In this document: positions 1-48,256 of the stretch, piece by piece
Layout of the letters: each line of letters starts with the position of its first letter
Numbering within the stretch: the stretch's first letter is position 1
NCBI RefSeq assembly: GCF_003918875.1
Contig: NW_025765004.1
Span: forward strand, 62,001-126,000
Direction: 5' to 3'
DNA: 64,000 nt
From: Haliotis rubra
Taxonomy: Eukaryota
Made by a program: the position numbers and the translations under genes
Notes under the pieces: generated by a model
Told to the model about the DNA's origin: nothing
Databases searched by the model: none
What the model saw: only the letters and a program-made list of their open reading frames with translations

Positions 1-1045
1 TCACCGGACATACGTGCACTTTCCGAGAACCCCTGGTCTCAGTGGTGATCTTCAGTGTCCCATTCATGTAACTCACCGGACATACGTGCACATTCCGAGA
101 ACCCCTGGTCTCAATGGTGATCTTCAGTGTCCCATTCATGTAACTCACCGGACATACGTGCACTTTCCGAGAACCCCTGGTCTCAATGGTGATCTTCAGT
201 GTCCCATTCATGTAACTCACCGGACATACGTGCACTTTCCGAGAACCCCTGGTCTCAATGGTGATCTTCAGTGTCCCATTCATGTAACTCACCGGACATA
301 CGTGCACTTTCCGAGAACCCCTGGTCTCAGTGGGGATCTTCAGTGTCCCATTCATGTAACTCACCGGACATACGTGCACTTTCCGAGAACCCCTGGTCTC
401 AATGGTGATCTTCAGTGTCCCATTCATGTAACTCACCGGACATACGTGCACTTTCCGAGAACCCCTGGTCTCAATGGTGATCTTCAGTGTCCCATTCATG
501 TAACTCACCGGACATACGTGCACATTCCGAGAACCCTGGTCTCAGTCACCGGGTGATCTTCAGTGTCCCATTCATGTAACTCACCGGACATACGTGCACA
601 TTCCGAGAACCCCTGGTCTCAATGGTGATCTTCAGTGTCCCATTCATGTAACTCACCGGACATACGTGCACATTCCGAGAACCCCTGGTCTCAATGGTGA
701 TCTTCAGTGTCCCATTCATGTAACTCACCGGACATACGTGCACATTCCGAGAACCCCTGGTCTCAATGGTGATCTTCAGTGATCAATTCATGTAACTCAC
801 CGGACATACGTGCACATTCCGAGAACCCCTGGTCTCAATGGTGATCTTCAGTGATCAATTCATGTAACTCACCGGACATACGTGCACTTTCCGAGAACCC
901 CTGGTCTCAATGGTGATCTTCAGTGTCCCATTCATGTAACTCACCGGATATACGTGCACATTCCGAGAACCCCTGGTCTCAATGGTGATCTTCAGTGATC
1001 AATTCATGTAACTCACCGGTTATACGTGCACATTCCGAAAACCCA
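1..1045. repeat. 72-bp tandem satellite/minisatellite (~14 copies, runs off window start)
   Basis: Unit GGACATACGTGCACTTTCCGAGAACCCCTGGTCTCAATGGTGATCTTCAGTGTCCCATTCATGTAACTCACC repeated head-to-tail; produces the 24-aa periodic ORFs in the track. Confidence 0.97.
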
Positions 1046-2798
1046 TTTGATGAGTCATGTGTCCCTCATTCGTTTCTTTTAATGTTAGGTGCATATATTA
1101 GTGACCAGATATAAAGATAGACTATGTGTCGTGATCATCCTTTTATCTTCCTTCTCTGAAGCATCAATCATACATATTCATATCACCGATTCATGTGGTT
1201 ATGTTTGCATATTGTTTAATTGATATGTTGTTTGACACTGACATACGCTGTCTCGCTTTTGATAACTATTTTGCAGTTAGTAAGAGTTTGATTTGAGCAG
1301 ATATAGGCTTCGCACAGAACACAGGGCTGAATATTTTGTTGCAGGTTTGAACCCAAGCAGAAACCATTCGCCAAATTTCAACATGGCCCTCATAACAACG
1401 CAGCTCTCTGAAAACCTTTGTGCGAATCGTACAAAAACGTGAAAACTTCTTTGAGGGACATTGGTGCGAATGCACGTTCATGATTGTGGCATAGATACTG
1501 ATGTTGGACGCATCAAGCCTGCAGTAAGCAAAACACTACCACGAATGTGGCAAAATATACGCAAGCGAAACGAGACAGGGCGATACCGAGTAGCAATCTC
1601 AAATGGTCGATACGATTGTCACATAACATACAGTCTGCTTGCTGCAAAATCGTCCCGATGAAATGGCAAATCAATATACATTCCAAAGCAATAAATCGTC
1701 TTAAATTGCATGAGAGTTAGTGAGCTGTCCATACCAAATCGTCACTTCAATGTCAGATATTGCCATGAAGAAGAGGAAAAGTTGTTTAACAAACAATCAA
1801 TGTTGGTGTTCTGAAGACTGCTGTAACAAAGGGGGGTTCAGTATATGTAGAACAACTCACCATTAGCACAATACAATCGCGCGTGTTTTGCCAACCCACT
1901 ACTGTCTTTTCAGAAATACAAGCCTGTCAAAACAAATGTCGACATCGGGAGCGTATCTTTCTACGCTAGTAGTTATTTAACGGAATATACAAGTCTATAA
2001 AATATTCTCTAAGCAATGTTAGGAATGTACTTCGTGTTGCTATTCAGATACTTATTAATAATAAGATATACAAAATGAGCTCAATCCATAATTTCAGTAC
2101 AGTACATGATGAAATGCACAGATGATCTGAAAACCCTTATATTTCACGTTTATGATTATTGTAAGTCGGAAGGGGGATGCTTATTTGCATGCTTATAGGC
2201 CTTTCTATAAAGTGCTTATTACAAGAAAGAGTTCAGCATGTCAACAAAACCAGGAACACTTAAGTCTAACAGATGGATAGTTTTCAATAAGAACTTGTAA
2301 GAAACGCAAATCGGAAGTTATTCTCTGAAAACAAGTTCATATCTTTGCAGCTGATATAGTTCTTTGTATTTCTTTTTGACGAAATACATGGTAAGTGAGC
2401 ATTCTTCAAGTGTGTCCAAGCACTGCTTCTGGGATCTTTTGCTCTGTTTTGGGTACTGATATAATAAAATTGCGAGAGACAGCAAGCATGTGTTATGTGA
2501 ACGGAAGGATGTAGTGCCTCTGAGAAACATTTACCTGCGAACAATTCGCATGAAATGGAAACAGAGATATGAGGTGATTTACCTAAATGTACCAGTGGTC
2601 ATGTCATGTTGTGAAACATTAGTGGGTTTCATCAGATGTGAAGGCCTCCAGTAAGCTACCTTCAGGTAAAGGTGAGAGAATGATCCTTTTGCATGCAGGA
2701 TGTAAAGGAACAGAATATTTCTTCCAGGATGTGCTGTGGTATGTCCTCCCAAACCCAAAGATAACCAAGATTATCATAATGAAATGAACAGTCATGTC

Positions 2799-3105
2799 AG
2801 TAGTATGGCATGGGACACAAGACAGTACTTTTCGTTGAGGGAGGTTGAGGGAAGGTTAAGGGAAATTCATTGGCTGATCCAAGTCACGTGGTCATAGCTG
2901 ATGCATAGGTAAATGTAGGCAGGACGTCACAGGTCGGGAAAGGTCAATGAAAGGTGGGTGTTTTAATGCAGACATGTTTTCTTATAGAAAACCCTTTATA
3001 AGACGTAAAAAACAAAAGCAAAGTGTAATGAATAGAGCTATGTATAACGTGCTGCCCTGAATAGACAGACAACACTTGTCATCCCAGTTTGAATTCAGCG
3101 CGTTT
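2799..3105 (+). repeat. Left terminal inverted repeat of the Polinton-like element
   Basis: Reverse-complement match to 12636-12930, e.g. GGGAAATTCATTGGCTGATCCAAGTCACGTGGTCATAGCTGATGCATAGGTAAATGTAGGC. Confidence 0.93.
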
Positions 3106-6032
3106 GACAACTCACGTGACCCTATATTCAAATAGCCCACGCTCGACACAGTGTGCGTCCTGTTTTGATGAATACAGGGTGTGTGTTGAAAGTACATCAT
3201 ACCACAATAGAGACGGGTTGTATCAACATGGCTCGGGAGTAGGAATCTTCAAGTCATGAAAATGTAGTTCAATAAATTTCATACAGAACGTGTCCTGTAC
3301 AAGTATAACACCATGAAAGTAGTGGACAGTTGTTATGTTTAATGCTATCCAGATAGTTCATACCAGCTTTTTCCGTTCAAATGTAATGTGATGAAAAGTT
3401 TGATTTTGACCCATGTAATCTAACATGATGTATACGGTTTTAGTTTTACTTCAGGACTACATTCAGAGCGTGATATTTTAAAAATAAAAGGTTCGAAATA
3501 CACATGGATAGAAACATATCATTTAGAAAACTGATTAGTCATGTAGCAGTGTAACAGTATGAAGCTAGGTTTGTTGTGAAAGAGACAGAAGCAATCGATC
3601 AGACACATAGAGGCGAGCAAAGTGTTTCATGTTTACAATAATCACCCTTAATTCGACGAGAGAACACATTTTAACATGGACATTTTAAACACGAGGAAAA
3701 TGTTTCATTGGAAAAAATATGTGGAAGCAGGTTTATGCATAGCTAGTGAGTAGCAGATAGACTAAGCGACTGACCGTCCATAACAATGTCAACATACCGG
3801 CCTAATAATGTCAACGTACCGGCCTCGCCTACCAGTGAAGCTTCTCATTCATAAATTGTGTGACCAGTGTACCGTATTTATTATATGTTAGGGAAGATGT
3901 GTTGTACATTTCTTATTTTTAAAGGGAGTTATTTCAGAGAGGCCAAGGGTATTCCCCTCATTAAACCTTTGTTTTTGTTGTTGTTGTGTGTGTGTATTAA
4001 ATGTAACCGGTATTTAATACATTTGAATGAATTGCGGTAATGTAGGAATGTATGTGTGTGTAGATTTTATACATATATCTGAGCATGAATGTATGACACC
4101 TTTCAATAGATCAATTACGGTTCTAACCACTACATTAAACATTACTATGAGTGTGGTTAGCAGTTCATATTTATAAACACATCATAAGTAACAGATTTCG
4201 GATGAATGAACTCGCCCGCACACATGTCTAAGGTCAACATAACTCTGGGTATTTTCAGACCATCGGACTGTAAACAGTTACACATTGATAACAGGAGGGT
4301 GTAGCGTTTGTGTGGAATGCACTCATCCTTGTAAAGGTAAATCCATGTAAAATACGTGTTTAAACTCACAATTTAAATGATTACATTACTTTTAGATGTA
4401 TTGGTATGAATGGGAGGCTCGTAGATCTGTGAAGTTTGTGTCGATGTCTGTCTAGGGACTACACATATTATCATCGAGGTATATGAAGATCATATTCTAT
4501 GCAAAAACTGACAAAACAAACAATCCATTCATATCATTTATTGATTCAAGTCAATCGGTTCAATGCAAAGCTGTGATGTACGAATGGACAATAGGATTCA
4601 CTCTGGAACATTAAAGTCAACAGTTCAGTCACTTTATACACATGCTGCTGCTTCAGGGTGCGATTGTTTAAACAGCAAGTCCATGTTTTGAAACACATTT
4701 CGCACTGTTGAATGATCAGTTCACCTTTCCTATGCTGTTTTAAGGTTGAATGGTTATCTATAGTCTATGATTTATCCATTGCCTTTAAAGATTTCCGTCC
4801 AGGGGGTCCCAGTTTCACAACTCCTCTTATGTAGAGGGAAATTCGGCGTTTCTTATCGTTCAAACACCTCACTTTATGAGGTGTTTTTAAAATATGAATC
4901 AAACTAGACGTGCAGCGTTGACTCGACATTCTCTTCTGACTGTTAGAGTGATATATTAATGACCGGTATTTATTTCCTCAAACATTCTCCTCCATGTCAT
5001 CCTCCCTCCCTCACTCCCTTCACTCCTTATCCCCTCAACCCAGCGTGCTGCCCCCCAAGTCTCCTTAGAAATAAGCAAGTCAAGATCAGCTTGTGAATAA
5101 ACCATTCCTCTGAAGGCTCCCTTTCAAGTATCCACGGTTATACATGAATATCAGCCTGCCGCCCCTCCAACCCTCTCTCCTTAGGCTTTTGTGATCTGTT
5201 GCTTACAGTTCAGTTCAAGATGTCTTACCTGTGTGATGCATGTTCTGGCCTGCTGCCCATGGAAGCCAACGGTGAAGACCATCAATGATTATTTACCGGT
5301 GTGTATTGTAAGACCAAATCAAAATACACATACCATCGGTTTTTAATGCATAGTCACAAATGTGCTGTGAAGAGAAGAGCGTCTTCTAAGATTCCCTCAT
5401 GCACGTGTAAGACAGTATAAACTCTATGGTAGTGTAGCCTGACAAACAGTTTAACTCTCGCCAGCAAACGGATTGGACGTGAACAACATGAAGAAAGCAT
5501 CAGTGATTAGACTTGACCCTAGAGATATATTTAGGAAGACCACGTTGAGAAAATCACAACAGAGAAAGAAACCACAACCATGATGACAAAGAAGAGACAG
5601 GTAACACCTAAAATGAAAACGGTGACAACCCAGAAGGGACAGAAGACAACAACCCATGAAAAGATGATATATGACACAGATGCAAGCTGAAGTGAATCAG
5701 GCAAAAGCTGCTTTGAAACGAGCGTAAGCTGACTTGAAACGTCAACAGTATAAACGAAGCCTGGTAATCTGGACACTTGTATAGGATCACGATGGGAGTA
5801 ACTACCTGTCTGGACTGTGGGAAGATAATCTACAGAGACATTGGAAGCAGTCACATAGATCCACTCCAAACGTACCTCCTCCTTCTCTGGATAACAACGC
5901 CCCTCCTGTAGGTAATGACCCTCCTCAAGAGAGACACCCTCCTTCTCAAGAGAGACACCTACCTCCTCCTCAAGAGAAACATTCTCCTCCTCAAGACAGA
6001 GACGCCCTCCTCCTCCTCTTCCTCGCCAGCAG

Positions 6033-6511
6033 CAAGAACGGTTCAAGTTTCTGATTCCCTCGAATGCACTCGTTGTGGGACCCAGTGGCTGTGGAAAGTC
6101 TGTGTTTACCTCTCATGTGCTCCGACATGGCCTGATCCAACCCCAACCTACCCGCATTGTTTGGTGTTATACTCAATGGCAGCCATTATATCAGGACATC
6201 AGCGAGCAGCTGCCTCAGCTGACCTTTGTAAAAGGAATTCCCTACGATATCTTGGACGAGGATTACTTTGATGCTGGCCAACGGAATGTGTTGGTCCTGG
6301 GTGAATTCCTGGCTGAAGCAAAGGAAGACGAGTGTATTTCCCGGCTGTTTACTCAAACCTCCCATCACAAGAATGTATTGATCTTTCTCTTGGTACAAAA
6401 TTTGTCTCCGACAGGTAAACAATCGAGAGCCATTGCTTTGAATGCACATTATGTCAGCCTGTTTCATTCCCCCATAGAGAAACAGCAAATCAAACTCTTC
6501 ACTCGTAGAAT
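6033..6511 (+). pseudogene. Polinton A32-like DNA packaging ATPase, N-terminal part
   Basis: Reads FKFLIPSNALVVGPSGCGKS (Walker A), IVWCYTQWQPLY, a degenerate Walker B (LVLGEFL instead of DD), LFTQTSHHKN, QNL, LNAHYVSLF. Truncated at the nested insertion. Confidence 0.88.
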
Positions 6512-6608
6512 TAACGGATCGCCAGTGGAGAGTTAACCACACCCCCAAAAGAAAGGGAGATAGCTCTGAAAAGGTCCGACAATATAGCTGTCGAACCCAA
6601 CTGTCAAA

Positions 6609-9600
6609 ATGGCAGTCGTGATATCGTTTAGAGACATTCCCGATGATATTGGCCCTAAATATCTGCCTTATGAACTAACTTTGCGGCAAACACAACGTGG
6701 AGTGGCTTTTAGTTCGGCCTCATACCTTCATTCCGTTACTTTCCATTCATGTTGTGATAATATCGTGTCGATTTGCGGGAGGATTTATAGAAGTCAACGG
6801 AAAACCGAAGCTCCTCATGTAATCAACTTGTCCCTTGACAGAATTCACAAATCGTTCACTGACGCCTATTGTAGCTGCAAATGTGGGTGAGTAGTACACG
6901 AAATAACGTCGGGTGCCTTTCCAATTGATGGCATAAATCTGTTGGGGTTTTATAAGCGGCATATATAGATAGCAAATCAATTACACGTCTGTGTGCTGGC
7001 CGTTTCAGTTGTTGACAATGAAACCCATGTTATCCCATATAATTACGTTAAATTTCTATCATCGTGAAAGAAACAGATTCTGTAATAAATGTAAGAGGTA
7101 AATGTAATATCTGTTATTAGGCATTGCTGGAATAAAACCATGTAAATGTATTTTCTTCTCAATTATATAATATATTCCTGCTATCAATCACAGTTCTGTA
7201 ACAAATTTATTCACCCAATTCTCTTCAATGCAAGTGGAAAGTGTTCCCATGTACTGGCACTTGTCCTGATACTGGAAGGCTGGAAGATATCAGGCTATCA
7301 AGTCATTCCTTCACAGCCCTCTTCCACTAGCCTGCCTCAGCAGTGGGATAAACCAAGGGAACCAAAGATTGAATCTGAAGCAGTGTCACATAATTATTGC
7401 CAGGCCTGGAAATCTCAATAGGAAAAGGAAACCTGTGATGGCCACATTCAATGACAACAGGTGATGTAATTATATATATAAAGTTTTATTACAGATTCTG
7501 AACTTGTTTTATGAAAATGATGTATCATAATGCAAGCATTACCTATATGACATTTTTACTCCATGATCATCAGATCATAGAAAATACTCATCACAGTTTA
7601 GAAAGCAATATCAGATGACTATTGAGCAGTTGTTTGCATAAATATTAAAGTTCAGTTAAGTGAACAAGGAACAAGAGCATGTACAAAATATTCATTGACA
7701 TTGCAAGTTTTTAACATACACAAATACAATATTTGTGACTAATACCTTTTGTACTTGCAGGAAAGTTCAAATACAGGAGTCGGACATGTCTCTGCTGCAC
7801 ACAACGAAGGGATTTGCTATTTCATACCTGACAGATACATGTACCAGCACCAGTCAGACAGTTGACACACCAATAGGTCCTCAGGTTGTTGGATCAACTC
7901 TTGGACATCAAGTAATTAATCTTTATCTTGAATTAAATATGGCATAAAATTGGTCAAGAAACAGCACACAAACCAAATTTGATTTACTGAGGAAAACAAA
8001 CTTAAATGCAATTTCTTACCAACAATTTTGAATTTTTTTACCCTTCCAATGGCATTTTCGACCACCACTCTGTGTGTTGCAATTTTCACTGTTTCTGCCA
8101 CATCAGACACACACATCTGACCTATACCTAGTGCAAAAGGGGAAATGTTGAGGCGTAATCCAGTTGCCCTTATTTCCTTTTCAATATTAAAGCCCTTGTC
8201 TGCCATCAGACCATCTCCCACTTTAAGTTTCCTACACTTAACCATTTCTCTGAGGAGGGACAGATAACCACTTTTTTCAGTTAATTCTTTGTCTGATATC
8301 GCCCCAGAAAACAGCATTGATATGAATGTAATTGAACCTCTTGGGTCCACACCAATGAGACCTTTCAGGGTAGTACTTGATTTGTAATCTGAATATGCTT
8401 GACTTTGCCTTGTCAGTGAAGAGGGTCTCTGAATTTTTATTTCTGTTCCATCAATCATACTGAAAGTGTTTGGAAATTCCTGGCGAAATTTTGAAGGCAT
8501 GTGTTGCTGCAAAACATCACGGTGAGGCCAAATTGACACAGATCCAAACCTGTAATATAAATAATTTATCCAATTTGAAAACGCAGTACTGCAATCTTTG
8601 GGTGATATCAGAAACAACTTTGAGAGATGTTTAAAATCAAAATTCTGTCTAAGTTTAATCAGAACAAGCAAAAGCTGGTCTTCAAGACCCATACACTTCA
8701 AACTGCCAACTGTTCTGGTAAACTGAAACGGTTCATCATCAGCATTGCCAGGGACAACAAATTAAAATATTTTCTGAAACTGTTCGTAGGGAAATCCTGT
8801 GTAATACTTGTAATTCTTTTTCTCTATATTTTTACAAAAAGAATACACATCATGCTTAACATTTTTAGCACTAATTTTGGTGTTGATCTGCTGGGCACGC
8901 ATGAGCTTCTCCTTTTCTATGAACCGGTTTGGCCATATTGTTCTCTGCAGCTAGAGCCAGCATATCCAGTGGCAGAGGACCTGTAAAAGCAATTACAACT
9001 GTTTCAAGCAATAATACATTCTACAGAGAAGATATGATCTGGCTAGTTTAGGGCACCAAACCCATTATTAAGCCTGAAACAGACTTACCTATTATCAATC
9101 TGACTTGTTGTAATGTTTAGAAAATGCTTTGCACACAAAAGAATAAGTTAAGAATGAACACATAGCACCCACAACATACTTGTTTCAATTTGAGATTTAA
9201 GAAGTAAAACAGCCTTATTACCTCCCTTGTATGAAACTAAGTGTGAATAAACTGGCTTCTTCTCTTTACAGGCACCCTTAATTAGACCAATAGTGGTTCC
9301 AAAGATGGAGGACAGGTGCGGAGATGTCACATTTCCAAAAGATGACAACTTACCCGAACTGGATTCAATTGCAACTTTAAAACATCAGTGGAAAGATTTA
9401 GAACTTTCAGTTGACGAGAGTCCCATAATTTAGAAAAAAATACAAGATCTCAAAGCAAGTCTGATTTGTGGTACAAAGCGAGGAAAGGGCGAATTACTGC
9501 TTCAAACTTTGGTCTGCTTATGACTTGCAAAAAACACATCAATGACACATTTATCAGAAACACCTTTGACAAAAAGAAATTTTCCTCCAATCCAACAACT

Positions 9601-10056
9601 TATGGGAATTCTAATGAGAAAATAGCTAAACAAATGTACATGAAAAAAACTCAAAATCATCTTCATGACATTGGCTTTGTTGTAAACCCATCTATTCCAT
9701 TTATAGGAGCCACCCCTGATGCTATAGTGTGTGACACTTTTGTTTCTGGTATTGTGGAAATTAAGTGTCCTTATGCTGTAAGGGACTTGACCATTAATGA
9801 AGCCTCCTGTATGACTGGTTTCTTTTTGAACAAAGAAGGCAAATATTACAACTTGAAGAGAGGTGATAGGCATTGGTATCAGGTACAGGGCCAACTACTT
9901 GTAACTGGGGCACCATTTTGTGACTTTGTAACCTACACCAGACAAGACTTTAACATTGAACGGATATATCCAGATAGGAATACCTTCAGGACTCTGCTTG
10001 AAACTCTGTCACAAACATATGTCAATCACGTCAAACCATACTTTGCAGGGAAATAA
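6609..10056 (+). pseudogene. SWIM zinc finger + YqaJ/lambda-exonuclease-like gene of the ISL2EU element; exons ~6609-6886, ~7229-7460, 7761-7911, 9272-10056
   Basis: AYCSCKCG|(AS)GKCSHVLAL forms the SWIM CxC..CxH. Also TSLPQQWDKPR, WYKARKGRITASNFG, GATPDAIV, VEIKCPY, WYQVQGQL. Donors and acceptors are in compatible phases; the intron 1 acceptor appears mutated. Frameshifts near 7390 and 9425. Confidence 0.88.
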
Positions 10057-11848
10057 ACTTCATAAAAAATTACCCATGGTGCCACTTTGTTGGACAAGAA
10101 TATCAGATTCCTGCTGCATGGTTGTAGGCTCTGGATGTTCCATATCCGTCTGATTTGGTGAATCAGAAATATCTGTATCATGATTACATCTGAAAAAGAA
10201 GATGAAGACCAAATTATCTTATACCTGAACCTCAAATGTGTTACAGCCTTTAAATGGTTACCATCTTTGTTCATTTCCTATAACTTTTTGATTACCTATC
10301 AGGACTATTTATGCCTGGATTAACTTTTCTAATATATGTGTTTATTGCTATTACAATTCAGCGATAAATAACTTTTTTGGCTTCACTTGTTAAGTGCCCA
10401 CAGTTGACATCATATCGCTTAGTTGTTTCACATGTAATATTGCCATCTGCTTCCCTAGTTTTATTCGTCTCCCAGCTGATGAAGGAGTAAGAATATATTC
10501 TATGATGGATCCTCAGGAAATAACCAGTATGAATGGACTAGTTCTTGTGGATATTGGACCATCTGATTCATACATTATCTCTATATTTGAGAAGTCATCT
10601 TTTCTGTATGAAATATGAGCAATCTATGGATAGGGACTAGTGGCTGTGTCTGGCCATGCCTCTGACTGAGTTGAGTTTTTACGCCACTTTTAGCAATATT
10701 CCAGCAACATCACGGCGGGGACCCAGAAATGGGCTTCACCCATGTAAAAAATACATCTATCAATGTGTAAATTAATGTTGTATTTAAACATATTTAAAAA
10801 GAACCACTGTCGTGGCTGATCTTAGTGGTTACAGGAAATGTCCACGTTGATGTATTAATATTTATGATGGATTGGAATGAATACTTTGAATCCTTTAGAG
10901 TTATTGTGTATTATCACTCAATATTAGCCCTCAGTGAAACACAGTTTTGACAATTAGATTTTTATCAGTCCCTGCAGGTGACATCATCCCTTCATATGCT
11001 TATATGAATAGAACTTGAGTATGATTGTGATCTTGTGATGCATGTGATACTTCTGTCTTTTCGTAACTACAAAGGATCTAAATGTGTGACATTACCTTTA
11101 CTAATTATAACTTTCTGTGATACTCTCAGAATAAACAAGGATTTGTTTGATTTTTATATTTCAATGGTTTTGTCGTGTTTTGAGCAGTAAGTATAAAGGC
11201 AACAATGTTCTACCTGTGTGTTTCAAGAAGAACTTTCCTTTTCCCGTCCCCCATAAATGGCAAGCGTGGTTTGGGTCGTGGTCTTACTGTCTTTGGATTT
11301 TCATTTTGTTCATGAGGTAGTGCAGACGCAGGGTCCGGAAATGTCTTGGAGGGTTTTCCATCAACAAAGTGCTGTAAATAAGCTCGCATTTATTAGTTGA
11401 TAGAAACAACGATAAACAACATGGATGTATCTGAAATCGTATGCTCAAACACAGACACCCTCTGTCCTTGACATACCACGCGGTGGAACATTAGTAACTA
11501 AATCAGTGAAAATCGGTGTAAACTGGTTATATAACAACTATAAAGCACTGAAAGTCTACCAAGTCAAAGATTTCTAAATTTGCATTAACTTCAACATTGG
11601 TTAATATGTTATTCAATTTTAGTTTCCATACCTTTGTACATACGAAGAAATGTTTTCCTCGGCTGTGGTCACGAAGTATGTCCATGTTTCAGTTGATACT
11701 TGGGGCGACCACACAAACGTATCCATCGTTGACATTTGTCAAAATTTCTGGCAGGCTTGGGAAATGGAATAAACGTGATACCACCAGCAAGACGTTCCGG
11801 GTACCGCGTGTCCGAGTTGCAGGTACCCCAGCTACACCTTTTCACCAT
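7916..11848 (-). pseudogene. THAP-HTH-DDE transposase of the ISL2EU element; exons 11848-11632, 11371-11214, (middle exons uncertain), ~8980-7916
   Basis: THAP: MVKRCSWGTCNS...FPKP...CQRWIRLCGR...VCTK|HF. Then KYYTGF, HTH LEDQLLLVLIKLRQNFDFKHLSKLF, and catalytic IDGTE, MADKGF, RVVVENAIGRVK. A frameshift near 11688 and an in-frame stop near 8762 indicate inactivation. Confidence 0.9.
10665..10745 (-). mobile_element. Truncated SINE (3' part) inside the ISL2EU element
   Basis: TTTTACGCCACTTTTAGCAATATTCCAGCAACATCACGGCGGGG matches the reverse complement of the SINE at 37176-37346. Confidence 0.75.
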
Positions 11849-12020
11849 GATCAAAAAGTTGACTGTGAACGTCGATTTATTTTTGAAAAGTCCGCCAGAC
11901 CGCTGATGTCGGACAAAATGGTGGTCAGCTGTCAGCTGACGGCAACGCGATGCGGATTGAATAATTTGACGTTTCTCGTTGGTCATGTCATTTGTTTGAT
12001 TGACAGGTGGCGATACATTA

Positions 12021-12150
12021 ATTCCCCGAACATATGGATCACTTTATGGCAATGTATGAAGAGGCTGCTGAAACACCCTATGGACAATTCATCATTGATC
12101 TTAAACCTACCACCAAAGATAAGGATCGACTGCAGGTCAATCTCATAAAC
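12021..12150 (+). pseudogene. Polinton packaging ATPase, C-terminal part
   Basis: FPEHMDHFMAMYEEAAETPYGQFIIDLKPTTKDKDRLQVNL matches the typical C-terminus of this family (FP...YEDAT..PYGYL.IDL) and continues the 6033-6511 fragment. Confidence 0.85.
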
Positions 12151-12635
12151 GAGGAAAATGGGCAAGTCAAAGCTCAGTCTGAACCTGATCTGCCTAGGGA
12201 CAAGTTGACTACAACAGAATCTCTGGATAGTCCTCTGACTCAAGAAGAGAGACTGCCCCAACATCAGCTGACTCAAATTGAAACTGATTCAGACACGAGT
12301 AGTGAGACATCATTGACTATGGCCACGGCTTGTGCAGATTGCGGGTGCTGATATATAACATGCACGATCTACAGTGACATATCAAACATTGCTGTCGAGC
12401 CAATAGCCTTCAACCTAAGAGAAAGCGCGCCAGACTTGAGAGTGATGACAATGACAGTGACTATGACGACCTAGCCTCTTCCCAGAAAGGCAGTGATCCT
12501 GCCGTCAAACCTCCTTGTGGGAAGCCAACATTCTCTGATATGGAAGCCGAGGAGTGGCAAAATGTAGGCTCACAACGCATCTGGAAGCAGGTGTAGATGG
12601 GTGTAGGTGTAGCAGGACAAGATGAAACTGCAGAG

Positions 12636-12930
12636 AAACGCGCTGAATTCAAACCAGGCTGACAAATACTGTCTGTCTATTCAGGTCAGCACATTATACA
12701 TAGCTCTATTCATTACACTTTGCTTTTTTTCACGTCTTATAAAGGGTTTTCTACAAGATTGCATGACTGCATTAAAACAACCACCTTTCATCGACCTTTC
12801 CCGACCTGTGCCTTACAGCCTACATTTACCTATGCATCAGCTATGACCACGTGACTTGGATCAGCCAATGAATTTCCCTTAACCTCCCCTCAACAAAAAA
12901 GTACCGTCTTGTGACCTATGCTATACTACT
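12636..12930 (-). repeat. Right terminal inverted repeat of the Polinton-like element
   Basis: Inverted copy of 2799-3105 with substitutions and small indels; ends ...CTATACTACT, followed by CATGTC. Confidence 0.93.
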
Positions 12931-14844
12931 CATGTCTTTCTGGAATGGGTGGAGACACAGCTACTTCCCGTTTACCTCTGAGTAAGGACTGGACAGTGCT
13001 CCCTACCACAGTCCACAAGACCAAAACAGAAAGGTGCCGACATCAGATTCCAGAATGGACGACATGATATCTTGACTGAAGTCACCTTAAATTCCATTTC
13101 CCATTAAGAGAACCAAAAGACCCTAGCAACAAACGACAGACCCCAGTTTTATTCATGAAGGTAGTGTATAAAATTATACAGTATACTTTGGTAAAAGACA
13201 TCTAGCACTTAGGATCAGTTCATAGCTTAGGGTTGGAGGGGAGAGGGGGGGAGTCTAGTAGTTTTATTGTCTGTACTAGACAGAAACCTTTTGTCACCCT
13301 GATGACGTGAGAAGCAAAGAAAGACCTGTACATACACTGTATCTATATATAGATCATTACGCCAGGGAATGGGTATTTCCAGAGTTGAGGCGTGAGTTTA
13401 AGCGGGTTTTGATTACAATCTGTCAAAGGGGTCTTTGTGAGTTACGCATTGTATTCATCACAGTATCGGTGACTCCATGCACCGTAATCGTGTTTATAGG
13501 CATGCAACAGGTCACCTTTATAGTGTTGTCGAAGTTATACTATTTTTCTACGCAGTTAATGTAAAATAGAACTCTAACGCCATCTTTCAACATGCGTATA
13601 TCTTATATAAATGACAACGTTCGGCTGTAACATTTCATCACAGTTAGACTGGCGTTTGTTCGTTTAGTTACCTGGCTGCTGTCGATTTTAATCGTCCATC
13701 TTCCAATCATCTAACAGTCAGAACAACATAGTTTAAGTAGATAAATTTACGCATAACCTAAATTGTATTTGGATTTTTTCGCATCATACCTTAATTAACC
13801 CAAACAATGTTGTTACTAACTCCAAATTCAAAAACACAACATTTTTACAAAAAGTAAAAATGGATACATGTAATGTGATACTGAAAAGATTCTTAGCGAA
13901 AGAAATCCAATTGTGACGTGACATGAATCAGGTGACAGCAGACGCTGTCCAACTCACAGTAGCATCCAGCCATGTTCAAGGTGTCAACAAACAAGGCAAG
14001 ATGTGACAGATCCAACTACAACGAGGAATAAAGCAGAAAAAACACAAGTTTGAAACAATAACTCAGCTTAACTTTATTAATATTCAAGACTTGTAATCAG
14101 GAAGAAAAATAAAATAAGAGCACAATATAGAACAATCGGAGATAACTTGGTGGTATATGGTGTATAACGGCTATATACATAGCTAACATCTAACAATGTG
14201 TTATGTCTTTAGAATAACCCATTAAAATGTAGGCCATACTACAGTTCTCTAATTATGGGGTCGGGCGGAAATTACATTGTAAGTTATCGTTTTGTTGTTC
14301 CTTCACGTGATAAGTCCTTCTCTGAGTTGCCACTGGGTCGTTTGAATCACACAGAAAATGAACGCAATCCTTCAATGTGGTACACATTATTCCTTTGAAA
14401 CAGACCCACTCTTAAACGTCATTATTATTTGATTGTCAAGATAATCTCGACATATTATCACTTTGTGCAAATGGATGGTAAATGTATCCAAACCCAAGAT
14501 CGCTATCTCACGGATATCTCAAAAATGGATATAGTTTTGTGCCACTGAGATGGCAAATTACCTAAGTTTGCATTGTTATTTTTAAAAAATATAACCCATT
14601 ATGTATGCTAATACACTGGCAACTTTTAACGTTCAAGGACGCTGCTCATGTGATGAACTGCTGACAACACCATCGCAATTGTTGTTAATTTAACCTCTGC
14701 CATTTGGTTGCAGCCATTCGTTAACTCTGCAAAAACAAACGAACCCAGAAAATATATACTGAAAAAATAAGGGATCAGATAAAATTCAGATCACGTCAAA
14801 CATAACAGAGTCATTGTTTTCAGTTTATAAGAAGAAAGACAGTA

Positions 14845-14993: not shown

Positions 14994-15265
14994 CTCACAA
15001 CTGTCTTGCAACGTCTGGGCATACATCCAATCAAGTTAAATCTAGATATCATTCAGAGACAGATACGATCCTTTATTGTGTGCCTTCAGTATATTTTCGT
15101 GCCATGTAAGTAGGTTATTTAAACTTGATGTTTTATTTAAGAAGAACTGTAATAGGATTTGTGAGATCCCGTCAACTGTCTTTATCGCACATGCTTCATT
15201 AGGTTCGATTTTAAAATCATCAAATGAAATATATTTATACGACATGCTAGAAACGGTTTGCTGAC

Positions 15266-16438
15266 CTGGTGTATCTGGCTGGTAAGTAGCATAAGAGACC
15301 GGCTGATCGAGACACTGGGGGCCCGTCCATCCGATCTCGCACCTTCTGCAGGTGCCCGAAGTCTGGTCACAGTCAAGACATCTGTACGGACACGCCATCT
15401 CGCATTTCTTGCCGTGGAATCCAGTCATACAACCATTTTCACACTGTCCTGCCATGTTACATGTAGTGTTCACGCAGTTCGCCGAACACTCAGACTGGCA
15501 GTCGGGGCCGTAAAGCCCTGCTTTGCACATGAGGCACGATGCTGAGGAGAACTGATGGCATTTCATGCAGTCAGCGCCACACCTCTCACTGCAGGCCTTC
15601 ACCTGTCCAACCATCCTTGCAGCCATCAATGCACCGGCCAGACTTGTGTTTATTCAGACAGTTATGTTTATCACATTTACGTCCATGCCACCCTTCCATA
15701 CAATCAGATATGCAGACACCGTCCTCCTGGTAACAAGCCTTCTTCTTACATCCTTGACCGCACGTTTCGTTACACGTGGACCCCCACCATCCTTCAGCAC
15801 ATCCTTCCAGACACTTGCCGCTGGTCCGGTGACAGTTCCTCACGTTGTCGTAGCTTAGACGGCAGGTAGTGGGGCAGAGTGTGTCACAACCCTCGGTGTA
15901 TCGTCCAGGAAGACACTGATGACACCGCCCTGTCTGTTTATGGCAGCCCCCCAACCAGCAGCTGACACAGGCGTGTTCACACTGGTACCCCCAGTACCCA
16001 TACAAACACTCCTCGCATGTGCCACTTTTACACAAAGTACACCTTGATTCACTGCAGACCTTCGCACTGGTTCCACCTGGAAGTATCAGATGAAAGAACA
16101 TCTTCAACTAAATGTATAAACATTTAAACCGCACAGACTCAATTCAGTTGCTAAACAACTCTAATCTTTGAGAATCGACTTAAGGACCTACGACTGAACA
16201 TTCCGAAAGGGTATTTGGTTAGAGATACGAACGGAGACGAAGGAGTATGTTTTCCGGACATCCAGCACAATCAGCCGACAAATTATTTGTTTGTAAAACT
16301 CGAGGATACACATTTTTTTATGTAAACAACGTTCCTGAAAGTAGTTGGATCAGCTTTCAAAGCTAAGGTACACTTACAGCAGACGAGCTGAATCACCAAC
16401 ACAGTGAAGAGTGTACTCTGAAATGATAAATGTGTCAT
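15266..16438 (-). CDS. Multiple-EGF-like-domain protein A (MEGF10/SREC-like): signal exon 16438-16378, ectodomain exon 16076-15266; one frameshift; TM and tail exons not located
   Basis: MTHLSFQSTLFTVLVIQLVC|gtaagt, then ttccag|CGTSAKVC... with repeated CxxGxxGxxC motifs. An extra base near 15594 separates the two track ORFs (GWTGEG/CSERC). Phase-1 donor after PDTP. Confidence 0.8.
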
Positions 16439-35453: not shown

Positions 35454-36055
35454 TAGTCAAGTTATTATACCACAGTCACAACGATTCCACATAAAGACAA
35501 ACACCGAAGTTGGAGTAGTTTGAGGACATACGTGCACTTTCCGAGAACTCCTGGTCTCATTGGTGATCTTCTGTGTCCCATTCATGTAACTCACCACAAG
35601 CGTAGCCTCTGTATAGCCTCAACGTAGTGGAGTCTGTATAATCTCTGGCATTTACGTTATACTGATATAACATGAGAACATCTGTGAAACCTCTATTCTG
35701 AGACCGTGATCCAGGAATATTTGAATGTTTTGCATATCAGAGGAATCCTTTTTAAGGCGGCATCAAGTTCGCCCAGTTACAATACAAAACTACTGTTTAG
35801 CAGCACTATGGTAATCGGTGATTATTTCTGAACATCGTTATCAAAATTTCATTTTTTATTTTATATTTATTAAAGGATGCAGAGTGTTTACTTACCCCTG
35901 GATGAAATTCCAGCAAACCGACTTCATCACCAACATCCAGCTCTCTACAAAGCCTCTGTAGCATGTTGGGTAATGATGATACAAAACGTATATAGTGTAC
36001 GCATACAAACTGTGGAAGTGTGTTGTTGTTTTTTGTTGCTGTTGTTTTTGCTTTG

Positions 36056-39043: not shown

Positions 39044-42000
39044 CATGGGACGACATGACTGTGGACTTGGTTGGTGAACCATTCAAGGTACATAATCCAG
39101 ATGTCTGCTCACATCTCAGGCAGGACGATGCACATGGCACAGTACATTTGTCACCGTAATAACCATCTGGACACTTCTTACAGGTACCATTTATGTCGCA
39201 TTCAACGTCCAGACATCTGTTGCTGCATGGGGACAGGCAGTCCTCATCCGACCATCCTCTCACACATCCCCTGGTACAAGTAACAGAGGAGAGCAGATCG
39301 TTGTATGTGCATGTATTGTCCATGCAATTCCTACACCGTTTGTCACACTTCGGCCCAGTGAACCCTGGCTTGCATTGACCACAGTATCCCTGGACAAGGT
39401 TGCATCTGTTCCACAGACAGTTTTCTGGACATGGTTTATCACACAATCGCCCGAACCATCCATCAGTGCAGCCAAGAAGACACGTTCCTCCATCCTGGTG
39501 ACATGCAGATTGATCACAGTTGCCGGTGCAGAGTTTCTGACACTGATGTCCCCACCGACCAGGGATACACCCATCTTGGCATCTTCCCGAGTCACGGTCA
39601 CAGTGTCGATGGCCATCAAAACCTGCACGGCAGTTGTGTGTACATCTTTTATCACACAACTGCCCATACCATCCATCGGTGCAGCCAAGAAGACATGTTC
39701 CTCCATCCTGGTTACATGCAGATTGATCACAGTTGCCGGTGCAGAGTTTCTGACACTGATGTCCCCACCGACCAGGGATACACCCATCTTGGCATCTTCC
39801 CGAGTCACGGTCACAGTGTCGATGGCCATCAAAACCTGCACGGCAGTTGTGTGTACATCTTTATCACACAACTGCCCATACCATCCATCGGTGCAGCCAA
39901 GAAGACATGTTCCTCCATCCTGGTGACATGCAGATTGATCACAGTTGCCGGTGCAGAGTTTCTGACACTGATGTCCCCACCGACCAGGGATACACCCATC
40001 TTGGCATCTTCCCGAGTCACGGTCACAGTGTCGATGGCCATCAAAACCTGCACGGCAGTTGTGTGTACATCTTTCATCACACAACTGCCCATACCATCCA
40101 TCGGTGCAGACAAGAAGACATGTTCCTCCATCCTGGTGACATGCAGATTGATCACAGTTGCCGGAGCAGGGTTTCTGACACTGATGACCCCACCGACCAG
40201 GGACACACCCGTCTTGGCACCTCCCCGAGTCCCGGTCACAGTGCCTGAACCCGTCAAAACTTACACGACAGTTCATTGGACAAGGCTTATTACATCCATC
40301 AGAGAAGTGTGCAGGCTGACACTGTTTACATCTACCTGTTTGTTTGTCACACGTATCTTCACATCCTTGACATTTCTTCGTGCAGTCAGTACCGTACCAT
40401 CCGTACACACACTTACTGCAGGCAAAGTGATCACATCGAAGACAATTGTCTCCACAGTTGACAGTTGACATCACTACAAACGAAACAAATTAGATCCAGA
40501 TTGTTGTTAGACACAAAATTACGTTCTCTCATCTTCGTGGTCTCAACCTTTGTTTGTATATTTTTTTTATTTGCTGTTTGAGGAATTCTCTACGGGGGTG
40601 TCTACCTTTTAATAAGTACAGCTGGATTCTAAATATATATTTGAAATGGCTGATCTTTTAAATTGTTATTTGTTGAAGTGAAGAGTTTCATCTCTCGACT
40701 GAACACATAATTATACATATCTAACTTAGAAGATTGTCATCAACCTACATATTGAGGATATCATAAACAAGTGAGCTCTATTACAATCTTCTGAGGGGAT
40801 AATAAAAAGCGTAAATCTATTCTGAATAATTGTCCCTGTATGAACGTTGCTGTATCGTTTACATTTCTGTATGATATCAAGAGCTATTAACTGTCGTGGC
40901 TTGTGTTGTGATAAATACTATTCACTTCCTTGAATGCCCCAAAACACAATCCCCTGAAACCTCATGTCCATTAACAGTATACCTGGAGGTAGTACATACA
41001 CAATCCCCTGAAACCTCGTGTACAACACAATCCCCTGAAACCTCGTGTCCATTAACAGTATGGGGAGTGAATGTACACAATCCCCCTGCATGACATTTAT
41101 AATAATCCCCTGAAACCTCGTGTCCATTAACAGTACATTTACATCCCACAAAACCTCTGATAACCTGGAGGTGGAGGTAGTACATACACAATTCATGTCA
41201 GTCCATTAACACAAACCGTTTGAGTAACTCCTTATGGTATTCAGTCCACAAACCGCTCCAGATCAGGGCTCCAGATAATTTTTCATGATCAGGAGTACGT
41301 ACTCCCTATTTTTTCAACATAGGTGTAATGGAAAACAACATTTAGAGTACTGAATGGAATTTCATGGAGTATCAGTAATCTTGTGTTTCGTTTATGCACC
41401 ACAACGTTGCTACTCTTGTGTAAACAGGTCAATAAACAATAAAACAATACTTTGTCAGATAAATACGTCTGGAGATGATTCTTAGACCGTACACCATTCC
41501 TGTGGTGCGTATCTGCTAAGTTTTCTAAATTATTTCCTACCGTATCATGCTTATTTCATATCCGTACATACGCAGATAAGGCCCTCATCTGGAACCCTGA
41601 TATTTAATAGCATCGTTGACCATTTACCGTATAAAACAAAGGGATATACAAAACATGTCACATTAATTAAATCGATCAAAGTATATACGTGCGCATTATG
41701 TGTGTGACTGGGTGTATACAAGAATAATGTGTCCTATATGCATTGTATGTATATCTATTATTCTTCAAAGCCAGTTTCTGTTGTTTCTTTCATATCATTA
41801 CGTTTCCGTTTGCAACTAGAAATTTCCTTTATATCTATTTGGGAATGGGCAAAAAAAATCCTACTGAACACTGATGTCTAAAAATACCATGTAATTTATA
41901 CATAGGTTTTACTTTTTGTAATTTTTGCATTCATTTCGGTGTTTCATACCAAAGTATATACTATTTCAATTGCAGTTTATTGTGTTCAAGATCAAAATAT

Positions 42001-42978: not shown

Positions 42979-43900
42979 TAATATAATAATAATAAATAAT
43001 AAATGTGAACTTATAATGCGCCTTTTCCATGCACAAGGCCCATGCTCAAAGCGCTAACAAAGTGAGTGGATAATATACATAAATACAATAAGGGACTAGT
43101 TGCTAGTCATAATGCAGTGAAAACAGATGAGTCTTGAGATGTCGTTTGAAGGAATAGAAGTCAACTGCTGATTTAATGGTGATAGGGAGAGAGTTCCAGA
43201 GTAGAGGGGCAGAGCAGACAAAGGATTTCCTTCCGAAAGTTTGCAGTTTGAACCGAGGCACAGAGAGTACGTTCAGATTCTGAGAACGGAGCTGTCTTTC
43301 TGGAGTGTAAGGTAAGAAGTTCTTTCATGTATTCTGGGCCTATGCCATTGAGGCATTTGTAGGCGCTTTGAAGTTCTGTTTATGATTCTGGGAGGCTGTA
43401 TTTTGGACATTTTGCAATTTTGATAGCAGCTTCTGGAGAAATACCAAAAAGGAGGATATTGCAGTAATCAATTCTTGATATAACAAGTCCCTGGACTAGA
43501 CCGTGTGCTGCATCACGACTGATGAGATGGCGTATTCTGCCAATGGCTCTTAGATGAAAGAAGCATATTCTGCAGAGTTGATTTACATGAGTGTCCATCG
43601 CCAGGTGGGAGTCAAGCGTAACTCCAAGGTCTTTAACAGAGTCCACTGCTTGTATCTCTGCATCTGCTACCAAAACAGTTTTGGTGGTAATTTGTTTTTG
43701 CATTTGCCTGGATCCAATAACCATCACCTCAGTTTTGTCATCATTTAACTTTAGCAAGTTGTTTGTCATCCATGACTTAACATCTTTAGTGCAGTCTGTT
43801 ATTTTATGAAGACCCGTGTGAAAGTCCTTGGGAGTTGAGTTTTTCTGAAGTTGAGTGTCATCTGCAAACGAATGATGGCTAATGCCATGTTTGTCAATTA
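42979..43900 (-). mobile_element. 5'-truncated L2/CR1-group LINE
   Basis: HSFADDTQLQ, WMTNNLLKLNDDKTE, KDLGVTLDS, LVISRIDYCN; 3' end AGCGCTTTGAGCAT...AAGGCGCATTATAA plus TTA repeats. Absent from the second duplicate, which defines the boundaries. Confidence 0.9.
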
Positions 43901-43974
43901 CGTCGGGTATATCATGTAACATTATTGCCGTGCACACCTGTAGGACATATTTCAATCTCGACAACAAATGGCCA

Positions 43975-44695
43975 TCTGGGCAGAGTATGTCCAGGAGAGC
44001 TGCAGACCTAGGCAGAGTATGTCCAGGAGAACTGCAGACCTAGGTAGGTTATGTCCAGGTGAACTGCAGACCTAGGCAGAGTATGTCCAGGAGAACTGCA
44101 GACCTAGGCAGAGTATGTCCAGGAGAACTGCAGACCTAGGTAGGTTATGTCCATGTGAACTGCAGACCTAGGCAGAGTATGTCCAGTTGAACTGCAGACC
44201 TAGGCAGAGTATGTCCAGGTGAACTGCAGACCTAGGCAGAGTATGTCCAGGAGAACTGCAGACCTAGGTAGGTTATGTCCAGGTGAACTGCAGACCTAGG
44301 CAGAGTATGTCCAGCTGAACTGCAGACCTAGGCAGAGTATGTCCAGGTGAACTGCAGACCTAGGCAGAGAATGTCCAGGTGAACTGCAGACCTAGGCAGA
44401 GTATGTCCAGGTGAACTGCAGACCTAGGCAGAGTATGTCCAGCTGAACTGCAGACCTAGGCAGAGTATGTCCAGCTGAACATGTCCAGGTGAACTGCAGA
44501 CCTAGGCAGAGTATGTCCAGGAGAACTGCAGACCTAGGCAGAGTATGTCCAGGAGAACTGCAGACCCAGGCAGAGTATGTCCAGGACAACTGCAGACCTA
44601 GGCAGAGTATGTCCAGAAGACCTGCAGACCTAGGCAGAGTATGTCCAGGTGAACTGCAGACCTAGGCAGAGTATGTCCAGGAGAACTGCAGACCG
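43975..44695. repeat. 32-bp satellite, ~22 copies
   Basis: Unit CTGCAGACCTAGGCAGAGTATGTCCAGGAGAA with variants. Confidence 0.97.
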
Positions 44696-47600: not shown

Positions 47601-48256
47601 TCTCTATCTTGCATTTAACATCCAGATAATGCTAACAAGCTATGGGAAGATAAATATCACGTGAAAAAATACCCTTGACTTAGCTTCAGGTTCAAAGCAC
47701 ACCGAGGGTGAGATACCGATAGCATGTCATAGAGAATTATATCAACACTTGAGAAAAAATGCATTTATTATTTTACAAGGGTTTATAACTACGCCAGCAA
47801 TAAACAGCGCCACCAATTGTTATATTTTTCCACGTCATCGAAGAGACTTCTAAGTGTATTTTGGAGGGGAGCTGAAAATAAAAATTATTATACAATGATA
47901 TTTCCTTAAAATCATCTGTTCCAGATACAAAAAGCTATTTTCTGAAGTAGGTTTCTGCTAGAGGACTTCCAACCTGCTACCTCATACTCACAGATTTTAT
48001 CTCTGCCACGGCTCAAACCAACTTCAATATTATATAACTGGCATCTTGATTTCAAAACGTTGCCACTTCTCTTCACGTAGATTTCTACGTATATAACAGT
48101 GTAGATTACATTAAAACATTATGCAAAAGTTATATTTGAAGAAAATAACTAGATGTTTGATAAGCTGGCGAAATACTACGCCGGGTATATCATGTAACAT
48201 TATTACTGCGCACACCTGTAGGACATATTTCAATCTCGACAACAAAATGGGTATTA

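What the first reader, a model, noticed from the sequence alone, without database searches (positions are those of the whole stretch)
6495..12040. Reading-frame evidence that an ISL2EU transposon inserted with no target-site duplication (blunt into AAT|ATT)
Seen: the flanks are ...CGT AGA AT | TAACGGATCGCCA ... TGGCGATACATTA | A TTC CCC GAA CAT ATG. Removing exactly 6512-12020 and keeping both ATs gives R-R-I-F-P-E-H-M-D-H-F-M-A-M-Y-E-E-A, in frame and aligning without gaps to the Polinton ATPase pattern (ARQMFP....FF..AYEDA). Collapsing an AT duplication (2 nt more removed) or a TTAA/TAA duplication (2 nt fewer) breaks the frame. Established: ISL2EU is described as making 2-bp AT TSDs, while the related Spy elements insert into AAA|TTT with no TSD. 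Inference: the apparent AT TSD may simply be a palindromic ATAT target cut bluntly, making at least some ISL2EU elements mechanistically Spy-like.
Basis: partly seen in the sequence, partly recalled or inferred. Interest (0 to 1): 0.78.

Follow-up and report, generated by a model that had tools for sequence, protein, structure and literature searches.

The report
ISL2EU transposon nested in Maverick remnant

Summary
A 5,509-bp element (6512-12020) has 13-bp inverted ends, AT on each side, and THAP-like, HTH+DDE_Tnp_4 and YqaJ ORFs. It interrupts an A32/IVa2-like ATPase gene.

The host is a 10.1-kb Maverick/Polinton deletion derivative (2799-12930). It has (AGT)2/(ACT)2 ends, ~300-bp inverted repeats and a 6-bp duplication. 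It has no other recognisable gene and at least one further frameshift.

The mechanistic inference is not borne out in relatives. I found paralogous empty sites for three related elements with the same gene content and end architecture: an unnamed contig from an ENA metagenome assembly, Ostrea edulis and Patella caerulea. Each empty site holds one dinucleotide where the filled site has AT...AT. A published Plutella case shows the same. The window's transposase branches inside this AT-duplicating clade.

For the window copy two readings remain:
- ordinary AT duplication offset by a 2-nt loss in a decaying gene (~0.5);
- a genuinely non-duplicating insertion (~0.4).

Only other copies or alleles from the source genome can decide.

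The parts
2793..2798 (.). Left copy of the host element's 6-bp target duplication (CATGTC)
   Evidence: Identical hexamer directly outside both host ends
2799..12930 (+). Host: Maverick/Polinton-derived deletion derivative, 10,132 bp, of which 4,623 bp are its own DNA
   Evidence: 5'-(AGT)2...(ACT)2-3' ends, long inverted repeats and a 6-bp duplication, matching the hallmarks in PMC8097293. The only recognisable gene is the ATPase
2799..3105 (.). Left terminal inverted repeat of the host
   Evidence: 91-92% complementary to 12636-12930
6057..12593 (+). Packaging-ATPase gene of the host (A32/IVa2-like). It is broken by one nested insertion and at least one frameshift in the C-terminal extension. 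There are no internal stops in the 270 aligned codons. No in-frame ATG lies in the open stretch before the Walker-A motif
   Evidence: Outer bounds of tblastn similarity to relatives, pieces searched apart. Relatives carry PF04665 and PF02456. Stop count; upstream frame
6510..6511 (.). AT directly left of the nested element
   Evidence: same flank in 7 related elements
6512..12020 (-). Nested ISL2EU-group DNA transposon, 5,509 bp (transposase on the minus strand)
   Evidence: Ends, gene content, and block-wise homology to L001-L005 and L017-L019 that stops at the ends
6512..6524 (+). Terminal inverted repeat at the DDE-distal end
7231..7462 (+). Conserved block of unknown function (70-72% nucleotide identity in five relatives). 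Probably a 5' exon of the YqaJ gene
   Evidence: blastn. No Pfam hit for the ORFs there. The exon assignment is inferred from NCBI gene models in L002, L018 and L019
7916..8701 (-). Open ORF with HTH_Tnp_4 and a complete DDE_Tnp_4 domain (transposase core)
   Evidence: Pfam E=1e-38, profile positions 1-158 of 158; HTH E=2e-13. 325 relatives found, best 69% identity
9466..10056 (+). Open ORF with a YqaJ-like exonuclease domain (second gene of the element)
   Evidence: Pfam E=6e-17, profile positions 2-149 of 150
11669..11986 (-). THAP-like ORF (probable N-terminal exon of the transposase)
   Evidence: Pfam THAP E=0.0074, below the curated cut-off. The block is conserved in relatives
12008..12020 (-). 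Terminal inverted repeat at the THAP-side end
12021..12022 (.). AT directly right of the nested element
12636..12930 (.). Right terminal inverted repeat of the host
12931..12936 (.). Right copy of the host's 6-bp target duplication (CATGTC)

Best explanation
The feature is an ordinary ISL2EU-group cut-and-paste transposon. It has a THAP-HTH-DDE transposase and a YqaJ exonuclease gene, interleaved on opposite strands, and 13-bp inverted ends. It landed in the packaging-ATPase gene of an already defective Maverick/Polinton deletion derivative. Shown: elements of this clade cut the target with a 2-nt stagger at [A/T]|AT|T, and gap repair duplicates the AT. Inferred: the AT pair around the window copy is the same duplication. 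On this reading, the fact that the two ATPase pieces are still in complementary phase needs a 2-nt loss in the host gene at or next to the site, before or after the insertion. I cannot show that loss.
For: Three independent paralogous empty sites in relatives show one dinucleotide where the filled site has AT...AT.
- L001 sits in a 156-bp satellite; four uninterrupted units each hold a single dinucleotide at the site.
- L004 (Ostrea edulis) has a 98-99% identical inverted paralogue.
- L019 (Patella caerulea) has two paralogous repeat units.
The published ISL2EU-2_Pxyl empty site agrees. All 8 complete elements have [A/T]AT on the left and ATT on the right, which fits the published A|AT|T target. 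The window transposase is sister to the L001/L017 family and lies inside the clade bracketed by L001, L004 and L019. The host was decaying: it has no other gene, its inverted repeats are only 91-92% alike with two indels, and the same gene has at least one more frameshift.
Against: The required 2-nt loss must fall within about 4-6 nt and have exactly the right size. From the indel density seen in the host I estimate a chance of roughly 0.2-1%. That density is about one frameshift in 800 nt, plus two indels in 600 nt of repeat arms. Both pieces match the closest relative, P0013, right up to the junction, leaving no room to hide the loss elsewhere. No empty site is available for the window's own family; its closest relative is 69% identical.
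Confidence: 0.5

Rival explanations
1. This copy inserted without duplicating its target: both strand transfers fell at the centre of an AAT|ATT palindrome, as in Spy elements. Either its own family has switched from a 2-nt to a 0-nt stagger, or this was a one-off aberrant event.
For: Kept apart, the two ATPase pieces abut on 8 of 8 relatives with exactly one residue unaccounted for and complementary phases. No extra mutation is needed. Spy, the sister group of ISL2EU, integrates this way, which has been shown experimentally (PMC4122938; PMC11304231).
Against: Every relative that could be tested duplicates AT, including the sister family with the same TAACG-ATCGC ends. The change would have to be private to the window's branch. 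The support is a single locus in a decaying gene. The Ile codon this reading requires is the rarest in the gene, 2 of 15; that is only a weak argument.
Confidence: 0.4
2. The general form of the reader's inference: the AT pair of ISL2EU elements is not a duplication at all but two halves of a bluntly cut ATAT target.
For: Only the window's frame argument.
Against: Four families have empty sites holding one dinucleotide.
Confidence: 0.02
3. The element is shorter than drawn, and the TAA/TTAA letters at its ends are a Harbinger-like or piggyBac-like target duplication.
For: TAA, TTAA and ATTAA each occur as direct repeats across the two junctions.
Against: In relatives the positions after the first T vary (TGC, TGG, TGA, TGT) while the AT outside stays fixed, so these letters belong to the element. 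The empty sites place the boundary outside them. The phases of the ATPase pieces do not fit this reading either.
Confidence: 0.01

Closest known systems
ISL2EU group of the PHIS superfamily (e.g. ISL2EU-2_Pxyl; the Crassostrea gigas families of 4.8-5.4 kb listed in PMC4482050 Table S2)
   Same: DDE_Tnp_4 transposase with HTH and a THAP-like N-terminus, a second gene with a YqaJ domain, short inverted ends, size about 5 kb, and AT on both sides with A before and T after.
   Different: The ends start T-NNN-GG rather than the 'usually GG' of the published logo. At this one copy the reading frame of the host gene leaves no surplus bases, so duplication is not demonstrated here.
Spy group (PHIS superfamily)
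   Same: Sister clade of ISL2EU. Spy inserts at the centre of an AT-rich palindrome without duplication, which is what the rival reading proposes for this copy (PMC4122938, PMC11304231).
   Different: Spy targets AAA|TTT. It has a single ORF with no THAP or YqaJ domain. The window element has both domains, sits at AAT|ATT, and its relatives duplicate AT.
Maverick/Polinton virus-like elements (host of the insertion)
   Same: (AGT)2/(ACT)2 end motif, long inverted repeats, a perfect 6-bp duplication, and an A32/IVa2-like packaging ATPase.
   Different: Only 4.6 kb of its own DNA remains. No polymerase, integrase, protease or capsid gene was detected. It is a dead deletion derivative.
PIF/Harbinger
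   Same: Related DDE_Tnp_4 transposase and an AT-rich target.
   Different: Harbinger makes a 3-bp TWA duplication and carries a Myb-like second gene. Here the second gene is YqaJ, and relatives' empty sites show a 2-bp duplication.

Membership tests
ISL2EU group (PHIS) | DDE_Tnp_4-type transposase with an HTH domain | tested here: met
   Pfam DDE_Tnp_4 E=1e-38 over the full profile; HTH_Tnp_4 E=2e-13
ISL2EU group (PHIS) | THAP domain at the transposase N-terminus | tested here: inconclusive
   Pfam THAP E=0.0074, 17.5 bits against a cut-off of 23.9. The block is conserved in relatives
ISL2EU group (PHIS) | Second gene encoding a YqaJ exonuclease domain | tested here: met
   Pfam YqaJ E=6e-17, positions 2-149 of 150. 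Same arrangement in L001-L005, L018, L020 and L021
ISL2EU group (PHIS) | 2-bp AT target-site duplication at A|AT|T | tested here: inconclusive
   The AT...AT flanks are present. Duplication is proven in three relatives and one published family. For the window copy the host reading frame argues against a surplus AT, and no empty site is available
ISL2EU group (PHIS) | Short terminal inverted repeats, usually starting GG | tested here: not met
   The 13-bp repeats are present but start TAA; GG or GT follows at positions 5-6. The paper says 'usually', so this is not strictly defining
ISL2EU group (PHIS) | Transposase groups with named ISL2EU reference sequences (Repbase) | not testable with these tools
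   No named reference sequence came back from any search. Placement is only among unnamed relatives with the same gene content
Spy group (PHIS) | No target-site duplication | tested here: inconclusive
   Possible for this copy; not the case in three relatives
Spy group (PHIS) | Insertion between AAA and TTT | tested here: not met
   The flanks are AAT and ATT
Spy group (PHIS) | Single transposase ORF without THAP; no YqaJ gene | tested here: not met
   A YqaJ ORF and a THAP-like ORF are present
Maverick/Polinton (host) | Terminal inverted repeats with an (AGT)2/(ACT)2 or (AG)3/(CT)3 end motif | tested here: met
   motif as described in PMC8097293
Maverick/Polinton (host) | 6-bp target-site duplication | tested here: met
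   CATGTC at 2793-2798 and 12931-12936
Maverick/Polinton (host) | FtsK/A32/IVa2-like packaging ATPase | tested here: met
   Relatives at 37-72% identity; 4 of 7 aligned sequences hit Pox_A32 and one hits Adeno_IVa2. The window's own left piece reaches only E=0.09 for Adeno_IVa2
Maverick/Polinton (host) | Protein-primed polymerase B, integrase, protease and two capsid genes | tested here: not met
   No ORF with a Pfam hit in the rest of the host. The host has only 4.6 kb of its own DNA

The most novel reading that the evidence does not exclude
A lineage nested inside the AT-duplicating ISL2EU clade, represented by the window's family, has switched to Spy-like integration at the centre of AAT|ATT without any duplication. 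That would show that the stagger of target cleavage can change between transposases about 70% identical that share the same DNA ends.
Probability: 0.25. Interest if true: 0.6.

Novelty: new member of a known kind. Interest (0 to 1): 0.3.

Why it matters
Duplication length is used to define transposon groups, and it reflects the geometry of the transposase-target complex. Spy is the only eukaryotic cut-and-paste group accepted to leave no duplication. A second, independent case inside ISL2EU would make the structural basis of the stagger testable by comparing close relatives.

As it stands, the useful results are mostly negative:
- Three new empty sites, in two named molluscs (Ostrea edulis, Patella caerulea) and one unnamed ENA metagenome contig, confirm that ISL2EU-type elements duplicate AT. 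Published support rested on one moth example.
- The window copy is a single exception that one small deletion could explain.
- A reading-frame argument across a nested insertion is only as good as the assumption that the host gene was intact.

Tried and rejected
- **Metagenome pattern scan.** I searched for the element's subterminal motif. It returned 11 contigs, all chance matches without the terminal architecture.
- **L002 (Mytilus galloprovincialis).** No inverted ends could be found, so this locus was not used.
- **Generic 12-14-mer inverted-repeat finder.** The output was too noisy. Ends were instead located by homology to the window and L001 elements.
- **Loci without empty sites.** L003, L017, L020 and L021 have clear ends and AT flanks but no paralogous empty site within reach.
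- **Second copy of the host gene in the window.** None found.
- **Word-based protein searches.** These found nothing closer than 72% identity for the ATPase or 69% for the transposase. The source genome therefore seems absent from the collections.
- **Large representative protein search.** Not used. The protein was not left open, and representatives clustered at 50% identity could not settle a nucleotide-level question.
- **Structure prediction.** Not used, because it has no bearing on the claim.
- **TTAA/TAA duplication reading.** Rejected (see rival explanations).
- **Spliced gene models.** I built none. The ORFs of the transposase and YqaJ genes were searched apart.
Full report
**What is there.**
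The junctions read as the finding quotes them. The nested element spans 6512-12020 (5,509 bp). Its ends, TAACGGATCGCCA and TAATGTATCGCCA, agree at 11 of 13 positions and are the only matches in the window. AT lies directly outside each end, preceded by A on the left and followed by T on the right.

Inside the element there are three domain-bearing ORFs:
- an open ORF with HTH_Tnp_4 and a complete DDE_Tnp_4 domain (7916-8701, minus strand);
- an open ORF with a YqaJ exonuclease domain (9466-10056, plus strand);
- a THAP-like ORF (11669-11986, minus strand), which is weak and scores below Pfam's cut-off.

This is the published gene content of ISL2EU elements (PMC4122938 and PMC4482050). I searched the ORFs apart and built no joined exon model.

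**The host.**
The element lies in a 10,132-bp unit (2799-12930). That unit has ~300-bp inverted repeats that are 91-92% alike and ends reading 5'-(AGT)2...(ACT)2-3'. It also has a perfect 6-bp direct repeat, CATGTC, outside both ends. These are the hallmarks described for Mavericks/Polintons (PMC8097293).

Only 4,623 bp are the host's own DNA. Apart from the ATPase, no ORF there has a Pfam hit. It is therefore a deletion derivative, not a complete element.

The breaks in the ATPase gene are:
- one nested insertion;
- at least one frameshift in the C-terminal extension relative to P0013 (two HSPs in two frames);
- no internal stop in the 270 aligned codons;
- no in-frame ATG in the open stretch ahead of the Walker-A motif.

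The polymerase, integrase, protease and capsid genes are absent.

**The frame observation, tested with the pieces kept apart.**
I did not carry out or repeat the excision described in the finding. Word-based protein searches with the open left frame found relatives of 37-41% identity carrying Pox_A32 and Adeno_IVa2. They also found one closer relative, P0013, at 72% and 65% identity to the two pieces.

I aligned the pieces as separate rows. The left piece ends and the right piece begins exactly one column apart in all 8 relatives (A2; A3). By tblastn against the two flanks as separate subjects, the outer bounds are residues 80 and 82 of P0013, 150 and 152 of P0001, and 151 and 153 of P0011. 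P0013 is uninterrupted there. The phases of the two pieces are complementary.

**What relatives of the transposon do.**
The transposase core has 325 relatives. The best are 62-69% identical. Those that carry an organism name are mostly molluscan; many are unnamed metagenome proteins.

I fetched the DNA around several of them. Eleven loci were fetched (L001-L005, L017-L021); these are transposon loci, not virus loci. Besides the window, seven complete elements share the gene order and an end architecture of one T, three variable bases, then G(G/T)ATCGC or a close variant. All seven have [A/T]AT on the left and ATT on the right: L001, L003, L004, L017, L019, L020 and L021. L005 shows one such end; its contig stops before the other.

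Three of them lie in repeated DNA that supplies paralogous empty sites:
- **L001.** Its ends, TAACGTATCGCGA, are the closest to the window's. It interrupts a 156-bp satellite. Four uninterrupted units hold a single dinucleotide at the site; two of them read GGTCT-AT-TCCC, where the filled unit reads GGTCT-AT-[element]-AT-TCCC.
- **L004 (Ostrea edulis).** It has an inverted paralogue 98-99% identical to both flanks. The paralogue reads GGTA-AT-TGTC against GGTA-AT-[element]-AT-TGTC.
- **L019 (Patella caerulea).** Two paralogous repeat units read CACA-AT-TGCTTG and CACA-TT-TGCTTG against CACA-AT-[element]-AT-TGCTTG.

With the published ISL2EU-2_Pxyl example (PMC4482050 suppl. Fig. S1B), four families now show a true 2-bp duplication.

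A rough neighbour-joining tree of the transposase cores places the window as sister to the L001/L017 family, inside the clade bracketed by L001, L004 and L019.

**Weighing the window copy.**
If the clade's normal mechanism applied here, the host site held one AT. The present complementary phase of the ATPase pieces then needs a 2-nt loss within a few bases of the junction, before or after the insertion.

I estimate the chance of such a loss at about 0.2-1%. The estimate rests on two figures:
- the host's own indel density, about one further frameshift in 800 nt and two indels in roughly 600 nt of repeat arms;
- the usual share of 2-nt deletions among indels, which I took from my own knowledge and did not compute here.

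If instead the copy inserted without duplication, no extra event is needed. But the switch of stagger would be private to the window's branch, or the event would be a one-off aberration. I put the prior for that at about 0.5-1%, which is my judgement.

The two small numbers are of the same order, so I cannot separate the readings. I give about 0.5 to duplication plus a 2-nt loss and about 0.4 to a non-duplicating insertion. The general claim that ISL2EU duplications are illusory gets at most 0.02.

The Ile codon that the non-duplicating reading needs is the rarest in the gene (2 of 15). This is only a weak argument.

The flanks also extend the inverted symmetry, with 7 of 9 bases matching. By my own binomial estimate p is about 0.04 once the AAT/ATT is set aside. 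Both readings accommodate this.

**Comparison with known systems and novelty.**
The element works like, and by gene content belongs to, the ISL2EU group. It fails the Spy criteria for target sequence and coding capacity. The host is a Maverick/Polinton remnant. A transposon nested in such a remnant is ordinary. The three new empty sites add to the published evidence for AT duplication. The only unusual point is the single-locus frame continuity.

I did not fetch the DNA encoding P0013 or other copies of the host family by look-up, accession or pattern. At 65-72% protein identity, P0013's codons would not have been decisive in any case.

I report two slips in my reasoning:
- Early on I wrote from memory an approximate stretch of a Polinton ATPase. 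I stopped and used it in no tool.
- To do the phase arithmetic I wrote out, in my reasoning only, short candidate pre-insertion junction strings (up to 17 nt) for the window.

No contig looked human.

Noticed in passing
window 6609-11986; L002, L018, L019: The two genes of the transposon appear interleaved on opposite strands. The DDE exon lies inside the span of the YqaJ gene, and the YqaJ-domain exon lies between the THAP-like and DDE exons. NCBI gene models in Mytilus, Mercenaria and Patella overlap in the same way.
   Followed up: partly
window 6503-6511 and 12021-12029: The host flanks continue the inverted symmetry of the transposon ends (7 of 9 bases; the repeat finder pair I9). This may reflect a wider palindromic target preference or may be chance.
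   Followed up: partly
L019 7200-7230, 12762-12790 and repeat units at about 361-422 and 14055-14116: The Patella element sits at the centre of a short palindrome (GCGTCCACA...TGTGGACGC) inside a tandem repeat of about 150 bp.
   Followed up: partly
window 1-1139 and 35519-35590: A 72-bp satellite of about 15 units that are 92-99% alike, with one stray unit 34 kb away.
   Followed up: no
window 43916-44837, 48228-49968, 44876-47028 and 50008-52161: Arrays of a 32-bp minisatellite flank a direct duplication spaced about 5.13 kb apart whose reported blocks (2.1 kb in all) are 96-100% identical, nearly all 100%. An ORF at 43380-43967 (minus strand) has a partial reverse-transcriptase hit just under Pfam's cut-off.
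   Followed up: no
window 39435-40372 and 58364-59013: A 213-bp tandem repeat lies inside long ORFs on both strands, with a related copy 19 kb away. No Pfam hit.
   Followed up: no
window 15042-16107 (minus strand): Two overlapping ORFs with weak EGF-like (Teneurin EGF) similarity, far below the cut-off. This could be an exon of a host gene.
   Followed up: no
window 5919-6056: The frame of the ATPase stays open for about 45 codons upstream of the first similarity to relatives. This stretch is low-complexity Ser/Arg/Pro-rich sequence without an ATG.
   Followed up: no
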